Assembly: GCF_006345805.1 (NCBI RefSeq)
Contig: NC_043021.1
Span: forward strand, 11,780,001 to 11,844,000
Reading direction: 5' to 3'
Source: Octopus sinensis
Taxonomy: Eukaryota
DNA length: 64,000 nucleotides
Of the stretch, positions 45,399 to 47,663 are shown in pieces. Under the pieces are notes generated by a model, which did not search any database, was not told the DNA's origin, and saw only the letters and a list, made by a program, of their open reading frames with translations. Numbering within the stretch: the stretch's first letter is position 1; each line of letters opens with the position of its first letter. The position numbers were made by a program, and so were the translations under genes.

Positions 45399-45420
45399 GT
45401 ATGCATACAGTCTTAATTAT

Positions 45421-45898
45421 CCTTTTCTACTCTGGGCACAAGGCCCAAAATTTTGGGGGAGGGTGTTAGTCGATTAGATTGATCCCGGTATGCAACTGGT
45501 ACTTAATTTATCAACCCTGAAAGGATGAAAGGCAAAGTCAACCTTGGCCGAATTTGAACTCAAAATGTAAAGGCAGATGAAATACTGCTAAGCATTTCAC
45601 TCGGCATGCTAACATTTCTTATTTCTTTATTGCCCACAGGGGGCTAAACACAGAGGGGACAAAGACAGACAAAGGGATAAGTTTGGTTAGATCAACCCCA
45701 GTGCATGCCTGGTACTTATTTAATCGACCCCGAAAGGATGAAAGGCAAAGTCAACCTCGGCCAAATTTGAACCCAGAACGTAAAGACAGACGAAATACTG
45801 CTAAGCATTTCACCTGGCATGCTAACGTTTCTTATTTCTTTATTGCCCACAGGGACTAAACACCCGGTGTGCTAACATTTCTGCCAGCTTGCCACCTT
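45421..45898 (-). mobile_element. Compound SINE E in YDJC intron 2: tail-2 host with two nested tail-1 insertions at site 2
   Basis: Outer 16-bp TSD ATACAGTCTTAATTAT (45405-45420, 45899-45914); junctions at 45618/9 and 45831/2. Confidence 0.9.
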
Positions 45899-47663
45899 AT
45901 ACAGTCTTAATTATGTCTGTCTAAACTTTACTATGTATATTTGTTGTTTTACCATCTTTTTTTCTCTATACCTTCTGCTTCCACTAAAGGTAGTTTAGGA
46001 CAGTCTGCTTTTGTGAAAGCTGTTGTGTATGCAATAATGGCCAATTCATTTCCTTAATGATAGGTGCCTGTATGACTGTGTGGTTAAGAGGCTTGCTTCT
46101 CTACTATGTGGTCCTCAGTTCAATCTCATTGCACAGCCCCTTGGACAAGTGTCTTCTTATATAACATGGCCCTCTGTTGATTATGATGACAAGGGTTCCA
46201 GTTGATCTGATTGACAGAACAGCTTGCTCGTGAACTCAACATACAAGTGGCTGAGCACTCCTCAGACACGTGTACCCTTAACGTAGTCCTCGGGGAGATT
46301 CAGGGTGACACAGAGTGTAACAAGGCCGGCCCCTTTGAAATACAGGTACAAGAGAAACAGGAAGAAAGAGTGAGAGAAAACTGGTGAACGAATTCAGCAG
46401 GGTTTGCCACCACCTCCTGCTGGAGCCTCGTGGAGCTTTAGATGTTTTCGCTCAATAAATACTCACAATGCCTGGTCTGGGAATTGAAACTGCGACCCTA
46501 CAACTACGAGTTCAGAGTTCACTGACCTAACCACTAGGCCATTGCGCCTCCACATCTTATGTAGCTCTAAGCTGATTGAAGTCTTGTGAGTGGAAATTGA
46601 AAGATACCTGACCTGTGCGTGTGTGTGTTTAAAGTCCTTGTGACTTGGCAGTTCAACAAAAGAAACTGATAGAATAAGTACCAGGCTTAAAAAAGATAGC
46701 TATATATATGTATGTGTTTGTGTGTGTGTGTACATATATATATGTATACATACATACATATATATGTGTATGTATATACCATATTTAAATGTGTATAAGA
46801 ATCCCTTTTTTGTCAAAAGTTAGGTTAAAAATGGCTACAATAGCCTGTGTTCATTTTGAAGTTGCTAACTGCATATTGTCCCATACAGTCCACTCAGCTG
46901 GCAAAAATGAACAGGAACTGTATTGCAAACAGGGCCATTGCTAAGCTCCTCAACCCCCAGCAGTCACAGGGGGCTTCTGCAGTTGAGGGGGGCACCATGT
47001 TATGATGAAAGTATGTTGATGAGTCATCTATTTACTTTGGTTAAGAATTAAAACTATCCATGTTAACTGAAAATTTCAAGAAGTAAAATGGGAATACATT
47101 GTACTTGCAAAAGTTCTTGTAAATGTATTACATTGTACCACGAACGTGTACCAGACTTTGTGGATTCTCTATGATGTCTATTGAACATGAACCAACCACA
47201 TGGTTCCGGGTTCAGTCCCACTGCGTGGCATCTTGGGCAAGTGTCTTCTGCTATAGCCCCGGGCCGACCAGTGCCTTGTGAGTGGATTTGGTAGACAGAA
47301 ACTGAAAGAAGCCTGTCGTATATATGTATATATATATATATGTGTGTGTGTGTGTATGTGTTTGTGTGTCTGTTTGTCCCCCTAGCATTGCTTGACAACC
47401 GATGCTTGTGTGTTTACGTCCCCGTCACTTAGCGGTTCGGCAAAAGAGACCGATAGAATAAGTACTGGTCTTAGCTTGAATATTCTGAACTGATCGATGA
47501 TTTTGCAAAGCAAAAGTGCCCCGTGTTTGTCTTTGAAAGTTCCCTGGATTATAAATGTGCTCTTTTATTCATATCTGGAAGTTTTATTTATTGAAATTTG
47601 TAATAGACCTAAATAAATTTAAACTTGTTGTACTTTTAAAGCTGTTCTTTGGGATAACGTGAA

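What the first reader, a model, noticed from the sequence alone, without database searches (positions are those of the whole stretch)
45405..45914. Nesting order preserved: tail-1 insertions land inside an older tail-2 SINE at a second fixed site
Seen: the outer exact 16-bp TSD brackets a tail-2 SINE, and two tail-1 pieces are nested at GAAACGTTAGC in its A-box region. One piece is only 32 nt of tail (45832-45863) between 18-bp duplications (45814-45831, 45864-45881) whose four differences are all CpG transitions. Inference: this is a classic 5'-truncated target-primed insertion. Unequal crossover would have duplicated tail 2 rather than introduced tail 1, so the chains are at least seeded by targeted retrotransposition. 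The compound sits only 6 nt after the YDJC exon 2 GT-containing donor hexamer.
Basis: partly seen in the sequence, partly recalled or inferred. Interest (0 to 1): 0.75.

Follow-up and report, generated by a model that had tools for sequence, protein, structure and literature searches.

The report
Octopus SINE chain built by targeted insertion
A compound short repeat in an Octopus sinensis intron was built when elements carrying one particular 3' tail, copied by a LINE that is also in this window, inserted again and again at two fixed spots inside the repeat itself; this is a tidy example of a known kind of targeted retrotransposition, not a new mechanism.

Summary
On the minus strand, 45405-45914 is one SINE compound between exact 16-bp target-site duplications (TSDs): head, a 29-32-nt tail-1 fragment, a 213-nt unit ending in tail 1, and a 198-nt unit ending in tail 2. 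Both inner junctions read ...AAAGAAATAAG|AAAYGTTAGC.

- **Tail 1 is a LINE tail.** It matches the last 34 nt of a 5.3-kb L1/Tx1-like LINE (33629-38915). That LINE sits inside a SINE at the other "fixed site", flanked by an exact 16-bp TSD.
- **Empty site in a relative.** The window is O. sinensis. The orthologous O. bimaculoides intron has the same outer TSD, unit B and the tail-2 unit. It lacks exactly the 50-nt block (tail fragment plus one copy of the repeat).
- **More lineage-specific additions.** O. sinensis gained another tail-1 piece, the LINE and two whole chains at or near these sites.
- **Census.** 13 of 19 tail-1 ends in the window abut SINE position 48 or 15; 0 of 10 tail-2 ends do.

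Unresolved: whether unit B entered a solo tail-2 SINE here or arrived as a dimer, and the direction of the 50-nt indel. The closest precedent is Tx1-Mar/SINEU-3.

The parts
45899..45914 (-). Upstream (5', in SINE sense) copy of the outer 16-bp target-site duplication ATAATTAAGACTGTAT
   Evidence: Exact repeat of 45405-45420, the only two copies in the window. Present at the same place in O. bimaculoides.
45882..45898 (-). Head of the host SINE, AA + positions 1-15 (GGTGGCAAGCTGGCA), upstream of insertion site 2
   Evidence: Aligns to heads of other copies. Conserved in O. bimaculoides.
45861..45881 (-). Copy 'a' of the 21-mer GAAATGTTAGCACACCGGGTG (SINE positions 16-36), the upstream TSD copy of the small insertion
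   Evidence: Together with the next part it forms the 50-nt block missing in O. bimaculoides.
45832..45860 (-). 29-nt tail-1 fragment TTTAGTCCCTGTGGGCAATAAAGAAATAA (32 nt if the ambiguous GTG is counted), equal to the LINE/SINE shared 3' module
   Evidence: 94% identical to tail 1 of unit B. Same length as the 34-nt module shared with the LINE 3' end. Absent from the O. bimaculoides ortholog.
45619..45831 (-). Unit B: SINE positions 16 to the end of tail 1b (213 nt). Its first 21 nt (45811-45831) are copy 'b' of the repeat
   Evidence: Present with the same ...AATAAAGAAATAAG|AAA junction in O. bimaculoides.
45421..45618 (-). Unit C: SINE positions 16 to the end of tail 2 (198 nt). Its first 21 nt (45598-45618) are copy 'c' of the repeat
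   Evidence: The ortholog in O. bimaculoides carries an 87-nt deletion and a 27-nt insertion.
45405..45420 (-). Downstream (3') copy of the outer 16-bp TSD, starting directly after the donor hexamer
45264..45404 (+). YdjC-like coding exon (45264-45398) and its GTATGC donor (45399-45404). The compound is antisense in the following intron
   Evidence: Translation LHLNLTEG... hits Pfam YdjC at E=0.012. The annotated YdjC gene covers the orthologous O. bimaculoides position.
33629..38915 (+). Partner LINE, 5,287 nt: ORF1 with a CCHC knuckle, then APE endonuclease and reverse transcriptase, with ORF2 broken into pieces. Its last 34 nt are tail 1
   Evidence: Pfam zf-CCHC, Exo_endo_phos and RVT_1. 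The RT matches human L1 ORF2p at E=4e-38. 30/34 identity to tail 1. Absent from O. bimaculoides.
33613..33628 (+). Upstream copy of the LINE's 16-bp TSD CGTATTTCGTCTGCCG, equal to SINE positions 48-63 (insertion site 1)
   Evidence: Exact repeat of 38916-38931, the only two copies in the window.
38916..39469 (+). Downstream TSD copy plus three 184-nt SINE units (positions 48/49 to tail 1). With 33563-33628 this is the host SINE chain split by the LINE
   Evidence: The host's own exact 14-bp TSD ATATCTATTACGGC lies at 33549 and 39470. O. bimaculoides has the empty site.
32986..33538 (-). Second compound with tail 2 outermost: head 1-35 joined to position 64...tail 1a, then positions 48...tail 1b, then positions 16...tail 2
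   Evidence: The O. bimaculoides ortholog is the simpler dimer [head...tail 1b]|[16...tail 2], so the tail-1a unit at site 1 is specific to O. sinensis.
14470..15430 (-). Five-unit tail-1 chain, period 184, with junctions at site 1
   Evidence: TRF gives 97% identity between units. O. bimaculoides has an empty site.
16474..17072 (-). Three-unit tail-1 chain, period 184, with junctions at site 1
   Evidence: O. bimaculoides has an empty site.

Best explanation
**What it is.** The inner junctions were made by target-primed reverse transcription of RNAs carrying 'tail 1'. Tail 1 is the 34-nt 3' module of an L1/Tx1-like LINE, a copy of which lies at 33629-38915.

**How it works.** The LINE machinery nicks two preferred places inside the SINE's own 5' region:
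- Site 1 lies between positions 47 and 48 (AGC^GGTATTTCG) and gives a TSD of about 16 bp (positions 48-63).
- Site 2 lies between positions 14/15 and 16 (GGC^AGAAACG) and gives a TSD of about 20-22 bp (positions 15/16-36).

The target is itself a SINE. I infer that the new cDNA can therefore anneal to the single-stranded TSD overhang, so the 5' junction is usually seamless. The inserted copy then looks like a head-less unit (period 184 or 213). If the cDNA joins early by microhomology, only a short tail fragment remains. That is the 29-32-nt piece, joined at GTG.

Each insertion regenerates the target, so hits can repeat. Unequal crossover or slippage then multiplies the units.

Tail 2 is presumably served by a different LINE without this preference, so tail-2 units stay at the outer 3' end.

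**At this locus.** The form [head][unit B, tail 1b][unit C, tail 2] already existed in the common ancestor of O. sinensis and O. bimaculoides. The 29-32-nt fragment was most likely added later in the O. sinensis lineage.

**Shown versus inferred.**
- Shown: the structure, the TSDs, the LINE at site 1, the species differences and the junction census.
- Inferred: the nick positions, homology-guided 5' resolution, the direction of the 50-nt indel, and that unit B entered a solo tail-2 SINE at this locus.
For: 1. **Shared tail.** The LINE and tail 1 share the terminal 34 nt at 30/34 identity. A related LINE in Argonauta hians (60% RT identity) ends in the same motif.
2. **LINE nested at site 1.** The LINE lies inside a SINE with an exact 16-bp TSD equal to SINE positions 48-63. 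Its 5' junction is non-homologous. Joining the flanks restores the SINE consensus.
3. **Junction census in the window.** Of 19 tail-1 ends, 10 abut position 48/49 (4 loci), 3 abut position 15/16 (2 loci) and 6 abut unique DNA. None of 10 tail-2 ends abuts an internal SINE position. Fisher p=0.002 by junction (computed with 8 tail-2 ends) and p=0.04 by locus.
4. **Enrichment.** SINE-E covers 7.6% of the window but receives 8 of 13 separable tail-1 or LINE insertions (binomial p=1e-6; a conservative count gives p=0.003).
5. **Host-derived junction base.** The base at position 48 is locus-specific (C in the 38.9-kb locus, G elsewhere). It is carried at every junction of that locus, as expected if it comes from the host.
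6. **Focal ortholog.** O. bimaculoides has the same TSD, head, unit B, tail-1b|AAA junction and tail-2 unit. It lacks exactly the tail fragment plus one 21-mer copy.
7. **Second compound.** Its O. bimaculoides ortholog is the plain dimer. O. sinensis gained a tail-1a unit whose 3' end sits exactly at site 1.
8. **Recent regional activity.** Both pure tail-1 chains, the LINE and the LINE's host chain have empty sites in O. bimaculoides.
9. **Matching 5' breakpoints at site 2.** The non-seamless 5' breakpoints fall at positions 33-36 here and 32-35 in the second compound.
10. **Regional correlation.** Tail-2a copies carry tail-1b units in the tail-1-rich region (3/4) but not in 104 kb of other octopus DNA (0/6, p=0.03).
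Against: - Units B and C are equally decayed: CpG kept 6/16 versus 2/16 (p=0.22), and non-CpG difference 9.2% versus 7.5% (p=0.82). Nothing shows that tail 2 was there first.
- Three old compounds share the form [tail-1b unit(s)]|[tail-2a unit]. That would also fit a dimeric master element.
- The 50-nt difference between species could be a slippage deletion between the 21-bp repeats in O. bimaculoides. CpG parsimony needs 6 events either way (my count), and no outgroup was available.
- Site 2 (AGAAACG) does not resemble site 1 or the non-SINE targets (roughly ^NRTAT; n is small).
- Units within chains share private variants and are 92-97% alike. Most units are therefore local duplicates, not separate insertions.
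- Everything comes from one genomic neighbourhood plus about 130 kb of other octopus DNA.
Confidence: 0.72

Rival explanations
1. Unit B plus unit C is a composite (dimeric) SINE. It formed once elsewhere and then spread as a whole through its tail 2. Under this view only the small fragment, if anything, was inserted at this locus, and the 'nesting order' is inherited rather than repeated.
For: - Three loci share the form [head...tail 1b](x1-2)|[16...tail 2a] with the identical junction GGGCAATAAAGAAATAAG|AAAC. All three predate the species split.
- B and C are equally old.
- A single TSD brackets the whole compound.
- The ancestral sequence has no TTTT run, so a Pol III transcript could span it (inference).
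Against: - No such dimer occurs among 6 tail-2a copies in 104 kb of other octopus DNA. The dimers occur only where tail-1 elements are dense.
- The first junction would still have to be made by nesting or template switching.
- In-place nesting at the same sites is documented for the LINE and for the O. sinensis-specific pieces.
Confidence: 0.22
2. All inner structure is DNA-level rearrangement. The 32-nt piece is what remains of a full unit after an internal deletion at GTG. O. bimaculoides lost the 50-nt block by replication slippage between the 21-bp repeats. Units multiplied by unequal crossover.
For: - Local duplication clearly happens. Chains are 92-97% self-identical with private shared variants.
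- A 5'-truncated SINE was duplicated together with its TSD at 3874-4176.
- The O. bimaculoides copy has other deletions.
- The first unit of the second compound has two internal deletions.
Against: - This cannot place tail 1 inside a tail-2 element, nor a LINE inside a SINE with a 16-bp TSD.
- Breakpoints coincide with the inferred nick sites in two loci.
- The region shows many O. sinensis-specific tail-1 gains.
Confidence: 0.12
3. The compound was made in one integration event. The reverse transcriptase copied a tail-2 SINE RNA, then jumped near its 5' end to the 3' end of tail-1 RNAs (template switching).
For: - There is a single outer TSD.
- The parts are of equal age.
- There are 1-5 nt of overlap at the junctions: AGAAA at site 2, and G or C at site 1.
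Against: - The jump would have to occur at internal position 15/16 rather than at the RNA's 5' end, and the head 1-15 would still have to be copied afterwards.
- It cannot explain the LINE's duplicated positions 48-63.
- It cannot explain the stepwise species differences.
Confidence: 0.06

Closest known systems
Tx1-clade target-specific LINEs and their SINE partners (Tx1-Mar / SINEU-3 in crocodilians; Kojima 2015, PMC4494074)
   Same: - An APE-type LINE and the SINE it mobilises land at one fixed position of another repeat family.
- The TSD is about 16 bp.
- Tandem SINE copies 'sandwiching a TSD' are attributed to sequential insertion, because the target is regenerated.
   Different: - Here the target lies in the SINE family's own 5' region and in a sibling family with another tail.
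- The 5' junctions are therefore mostly seamless and give head-less 184- or 213-nt units.
- There are two sites rather than one.
- Tx1 membership of this LINE is not established.
Stringent-type LINE/SINE pairs that share a 3' tail (for example UnaL2/UnaSINE1; background in PMC4758252 and PMC6007223)
   Same: - The SINE's last 34 nt match the LINE 3' end.
- There is no poly(A) in the copies.
- A small hairpin is predicted just upstream of the end.
   Different: - Recognition of the tail by the reverse transcriptase is not tested.
- The hairpin is not statistically supported (z-scores -0.3 to -2.9).
Modular ('jigsaw') mollusc SINEs with exchangeable heads, cores and tails (Matetovici et al. 2016, PMC4758252)
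   Same: - One head and body occur with two alternative tails.
- There is a conserved central core: 38 nt recur in unrelated metagenome contigs.
   Different: That work explains module exchange by recombination or template switching. Here the units are stacked by insertion, not swapped.
Ordinary SINE-derived tandem repeats formed by unequal crossover or slippage
   Same: Chains of 3-5 nearly identical units occur (92-97% identity). Other SINE families in the window also show tandem copies.
   Different: The focal units are only 85% alike and carry different tails. The unit boundaries coincide with a LINE insertion site.

Membership tests
SINE with a LINE-derived 3' tail (non-autonomous non-LTR retrotransposon) | 3' end shared with an autonomous LINE in the same genome | tested here: met
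   The LINE at 33629-38915 ends in tail 1, with 30/34 identity.
SINE with a LINE-derived 3' tail (non-autonomous non-LTR retrotransposon) | Copies flanked by target-site duplications, with empty sites in relatives | tested here: met
   Exact TSDs of 16, 14 and 16 bp. Empty sites in O. bimaculoides for four insertions.
SINE with a LINE-derived 3' tail (non-autonomous non-LTR retrotransposon) | Pol III head derived from tRNA, 5S or 7SL RNA, with A and B boxes | tested here: inconclusive
   ARAGORN and Rfam find no tRNA. There is only a loose A-box-like TGGCAGAAACG at positions 13-23 and a degenerate B-box-like AGTTCAAATTC at position 76.
Target-specific APE-type LINE with SINE partner (Tx1-like behaviour) | LINE and SINE copies inserted at the same nucleotide of a defined target sequence | tested here: met
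   The LINE and 9 SINE-unit junctions lie at position 47|48. Three further junctions lie at position 14/15|16.
Target-specific APE-type LINE with SINE partner (Tx1-like behaviour) | Most genomic copies occupy the target | not testable with these tools
   Only the window (13/19 tail-1 ends internal) and about 130 kb of other octopus DNA (few tail-1 copies) were available.
Target-specific APE-type LINE with SINE partner (Tx1-like behaviour) | Reverse transcriptase groups phylogenetically with the Tx1 clade | tested here: inconclusive
   The best solved relative is human L1 ORF2p (E=4e-38, against R2 at 1e-19). ORF1 has a CCHC knuckle. The Argonauta homolog has zf-RVT. No Tx1, CR1 or other references were available for a tree.
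5'-truncated target-primed insertion (the 32-nt piece) | Intact 3' end, missing 5' part, flanked by a duplication of the target | tested here: met
   The 29-32-nt tail end lies between 18-21-bp repeats with GTG microhomology at the 5' junction.
5'-truncated target-primed insertion (the 32-nt piece) | An empty site with a single copy of the target in a relative, with polarity shown by an outgroup | tested here: inconclusive
   An empty site is present in O. bimaculoides. No outgroup was available, so a slippage deletion is not excluded.
Tandem repeat made only by unequal crossover | Neighbouring units are each other's closest relatives and have the same ends | tested here: not met
   Focal units B and C are 85% identical and end in different tails. 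The feature is met for the 184-bp chains elsewhere in the window.

The most novel reading that the evidence does not exclude
The LINE and its tail-1 SINEs form a self-homing system. Its endonuclease has evolved to recognise the promoter-proximal part of the SINE family it mobilises. It would use SINE copies as safe landing pads, disable older competitor copies (tail 2) by splitting their promoter, act mostly locally, and so generate much of the octopus-specific SINE expansion and the hundreds of 'unclassified SINE families' reported for O. vulgaris.
Probability: 0.15. Interest if true: 0.6.

Novelty: new member of a known kind. Interest (0 to 1): 0.42.

Why it matters
- **Partner identified.** It identifies the autonomous partner and the insertion preference of an abundant octopus SINE.
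- **Annotation.** It explains why these SINEs occur as head-less chains. That matters for repeat annotation: compounds can be mistaken for many separate families, and ages and copy numbers can be miscounted.
- **Stepwise assembly.** It gives a dated example, since one species has the extra piece and the other does not.
- **Limits.** It does not change how retrotransposition is understood. No effect on YDJC splicing is shown, although the element starts right after the donor hexamer.

Tried and rejected
- **Exon peptide search for orthologs** found nothing.
- **Exact look-ups of two ORFs overlapping the compound** were not on record.
- **Scans for the SINE core:** none in viral contigs. Three metagenome contigs share only the 38-nt core, so they were no use for architecture.
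- **tRNA origin:** Rfam and ARAGORN found nothing.
- **Is unit B's 5' half a copy of unit C (a very long TSD)?** The shared variants are mostly CpG or subfamily changes, so this is inconclusive.
- **Relative age of B and C** from CpG retention and non-CpG divergence: no significant difference.
- **Search for a 'mini-SINE' family with the head-36|tail junction:** only the focal copy was found.
- **Other loci:** the Argonauta LINE locus has the same tail motif but no internal-site chains. An ENA LINE locus turned out not to be octopus.
- **Literature:** no description of these octopus chains in the searched papers.
- **Rejected: a tail-2 SINE inserted after a tail-1 element.** That would leave its own TSD between B and C, and none is there.
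- **Rejected: priming by base-pairing between the nicked target and the RNA tail.** The primer end at site 1 (...GAAATACC) has the same sense as the tail, not its complement.
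Full report
**1. What is in the interval**

The window is eukaryotic DNA with 40% G+C and CpG observed/expected 0.67. An exact look-up of its 1830-aa ORF places it in Octopus sinensis, GCA_006345805.1, chromosome CM016883.1, with window position equal to record position minus 11,770,000.

Read on the minus strand, 45405-45914 has the following order. Positions are numbered from the G of GGYGGCRAGC.
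- The 16-bp TSD ATAATTAAGACTGTAT.
- AA plus head positions 1-15.
- Copy 'a' of a 21-mer (positions 16-36, GAAATGTTAGCACACCGGGTG).
- A 29-nt end of 'tail 1' (...GGGCAATAAAGAAATAA).
- Unit B, positions 16 to the end of tail 1 (213 nt, starting with 21-mer copy 'b').
- Unit C, positions 16 to the end of 'tail 2' (198 nt, starting with copy 'c').
- The same 16-bp TSD.

The 16-mer occurs only at these two places in 64 kb. Shuffled sequence gives about 0.55 exact 15-mer repeats within 6 kb.

Three refinements apply:
- The repeat extends to 21-22 nt (GTG on one side, possibly A on the other).
- A third copy of the repeat heads unit C.
- CpG-only differences would be seen between any two copies of this CpG-rich segment.

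The exon LHLNLTEG...SEE (45264-45398) is YdjC-like (Pfam E=0.012). The orthologous O. bimaculoides position lies inside an annotated YdjC gene. The TSD begins immediately after the GTATGC donor hexamer. 'Exon 2' and 'A box' were not verified. No tRNA is detectable, only a loose A-box-like match at positions 13-23.

**2. The same architecture elsewhere in the window**

BLAST of the units against the window finds four other compounds:
- 14470-15430(-), five units of period 184.
- 16474-17072(-), three units of period 184.
- 38916-39469(+), three units of period 184.
- 32986-33538(-).

In the period-184 chains, the end of tail 1 is joined to SINE position 48/49 (...AAAGAAATAG|GTATTTCG).

The compound at 32986-33538 has both junction types and, like the focal one, ends in tail 2. 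Its order is head 1-35 joined to position 64, then tail 1a, then positions 48 to tail 1b, then positions 16 to tail 2.

A census of every tail end gives these counts:

| Tail end | Abuts position 48/49 | Abuts position 15/16 | Abuts unique DNA or a full-length neighbour |
|---|---|---|---|
| Tail 1 (19 ends) | 10 (four loci) | 3 (two loci) | 6 |
| Tail 2 (10 ends) | 0 | 0 | 10 |

Fisher tests (computed with 8 tail-2 ends) give p=0.002 by junction and p=0.04 by locus.

**3. Tail 1 belongs to a LINE, and that LINE sits in a SINE at site 1**

Between 33629 and 38915 lies a 5.3-kb element. It has an ORF1 with a CCHC knuckle, an APE-type endonuclease and a reverse transcriptase. ORF2 is broken into several pieces.
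- The reverse transcriptase is closest among solved structures to human L1 ORF2p (E=4e-38, against 1e-19 for R2).
- The nearest database protein is from Argonauta hians (60% identity, with a zf-RVT domain).
- The LINE's last 34 nt are tail 1, at 30/34 identity.
- The Argonauta LINE and neighbouring short elements end in a recognisably related motif.

The LINE is flanked by the exact 16-mer CGTATTTCGTCTGCCG at 33613 and 38916. That 16-mer is SINE positions 48-63. Upstream is a SINE head ending at position 63, and downstream the SINE resumes at position 48. Joining the flanks restores the SINE consensus.

Because the LINE's 5' end is unrelated to the SINE, this duplication is an unambiguous TSD. 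It shows true insertion at site 1, not tandem duplication or template switching.

The nucleotide at position 48 differs between loci (C here, G in the other chains). It is repeated at every junction of its locus. The tail therefore ends ...AAAGAAATA, and position 48 belongs to the host.

**4. Comparison with Octopus bimaculoides**

The last protein search, with the 1830-aa ORF as query, returned its 84%-identical O. bimaculoides ortholog. The locus of that ortholog (L007) also covers the orthologous YDJC start and the focal site. The comparison gives four results.

- **Focal site.** O. bimaculoides has the same outer TSD, head, unit B with the junction ...AATAAAGAAATAAG|AAA, and the tail-2 unit. 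That unit carries its own 87-nt deletion and 27-nt insertion. O. bimaculoides lacks exactly 50 nt: the tail fragment plus one copy of the 21-mer.
- **Age of the B|C junction.** It is older than the species split, which is given as 13.3-33.5 Myr for O. vulgaris versus O. bimaculoides in PMC13282606.
- **Second compound.** Its O. bimaculoides ortholog is a plain dimer [head...tail 1b]|[16...tail 2] with TSD AATAGATATTA. O. sinensis has an additional tail-1a unit whose 3' end lies exactly at site 1. Its 5' junction shows CCG microhomology and a 28-nt loss.
- **Other insertions.** The LINE together with its host chain, and both pure tail-1 chains, have clean empty sites in O. bimaculoides.

Tail-1 elements have therefore been active in this region in the O. 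sinensis lineage, and they repeatedly ended at the two sites.

**5. Mechanism**

I infer the following:
- At site 1 the bottom strand is nicked opposite 47|48 and the top strand at 63|64.
- At site 2 the nicks are at 14/15|16 and about 35/36.
- When the incoming RNA is itself a SINE, the cDNA region complementary to the single-stranded TSD overhang can anneal to it. This gives a seamless junction and a head-less unit.
- When joining happens earlier by microhomology, a truncated piece results (GTG here, CCG in the second compound).

The 5' breakpoints at site 2 agree between the two loci, at positions 33-36 and 32-35. This fits a defined top-strand nick.

Each insertion duplicates the target, so further hits are possible. 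The same reasoning was used for tandem SINEU-3 copies 'sandwiching a TSD' (PMC4494074).

Most chain units are nevertheless local copies:
- Units are 92-97% identical within chains, against about 85% between loci.
- They share private variants, including some in the part that would come from the incoming RNA.
- A truncated SINE has been duplicated together with its TSD at 3874-4176.

**6. What remains open**

- **Order of arrival of B and C.** Units B and C are equally decayed. Three old compounds share the form tail-1b unit(s) | tail-2a unit. Unit B may therefore have arrived with unit C as a dimeric element.
  - Against that, no such dimer occurs among six tail-2a copies in 104 kb of other octopus DNA. 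Compounds occur only where tail-1 elements are dense (p=0.03).
- **Direction of the 50-nt indel.** It is not polarised. My parsimony count over the four CpG sites needs six changes under either direction, and no outgroup could be reached.
- **Site 2 motif.** Site 2 does not resemble site 1 or the few non-SINE targets. Those look like ^NRTAT: AATATCTATT, AATATTTATG, GGTATCAAG. All hosts hit at site 2 carry the GAAACG variant of the head, while the heads of the pure tail-1 chains at 14470-15430 and 16474-17072 have GAATCG.
- **LINE clade.** It is undetermined.

**7. Comparison with known systems and verdict**

Among APE-type LINEs, site-specific insertion is reported for the Tx1 and R1 clades (PMC6007223). 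The Tx1-Mar/SINEU-3 pair shows a LINE and its SINE sharing a fixed site in another transposon, with a 16-bp TSD and tandem copies (PMC4494074).

The present case works the same way, but the target is the SINE's own 5' region. That produces seamless head-to-tail chains. I found no description of these octopus chains in the papers searched.

I classify it as a new member of a known kind. It is a well-supported and useful annotation insight, of moderate interest.

Noticed in passing
window 22209-27701 (+): A single-exon ORF of 1830 aa with a C-terminal run of acidic 8-residue repeats (SEESEDQI) and no Pfam domain. It belongs to an octopus-restricted family with an 84% ortholog in O. bimaculoides and 50-63% paralogs in O. 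bimaculoides, O. vulgaris and O. sinensis.
   Followed up: partly
window as a whole versus L008, L009, L010: Tail-1 elements are very unevenly distributed. There are 19 tail-1 ends in this 64-kb window and only one in 104 kb from three other octopus loci. This suggests regional or local activity, which is unexplained.
   Followed up: partly
window 32975-33562 and 39470-39483: Two SINE compounds of opposite orientation used overlapping targets (TAATAG/TCTATT and ATATCTATTACGGC). O. bimaculoides shows the single-copy site.
   Followed up: yes
window 3874-4176 (-): A 5'-truncated tail-1 SINE is duplicated together with its TSD ATTAATGTTT (period 146, 97% identity). This is a DNA-level tandem duplication, not two insertions.
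   Followed up: partly
window 1059-1469 and 1900-2152: Other SINE families also occur as tandem copies (period 222 x1.9 and period 110 x2.3). It was not examined whether they too have fixed junctions.
   Followed up: no
window about 17050-17100 (-): The head of the three-unit chain is duplicated: AAGGTGGCAAGCTGGCAGAATC, then T, then the same 22 nt. The first copy ends a few bases past site 2.
   Followed up: no
L001-L003 (metagenome contigs): A 38-nt core of the SINE (GACTTTGCCTTTCATCCTTTCGGGGTCGAT...GTACC) recurs in three unrelated metagenome contigs without the rest of the element. It is probably a conserved SINE central domain of the Deu/Nin-DC kind, but that was not verified.
   Followed up: partly
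L004 12230-12290 and other sites (Argonauta hians): A related LINE and many short elements end in GTGGCTAATAGAGAAATCTAT. The tail-1 module is therefore conserved across octopods. A similar small hairpin is predicted upstream of the end in both genera.
   Followed up: partly
L007 7663-8270 (+) and window 19916-19957: A third compound lies in O. bimaculoides: two near-identical tail-1b units (with an assembly gap of N) followed by a tail-2a unit at site 2. In O. sinensis only the last ~42 nt of its tail 2 remain next to the same flank.
   Followed up: partly
window 40572-40631 (+): A SINE fragment (positions 72-131) ends abruptly in a long (TA)n microsatellite.
   Followed up: no
window 8200-8646 (+): An ORF resembling the C-terminal part of another LINE reverse transcriptase (...VWNPYL...LEAVQRRATK...). 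It is unrelated to the tail-1 LINE.
   Followed up: no
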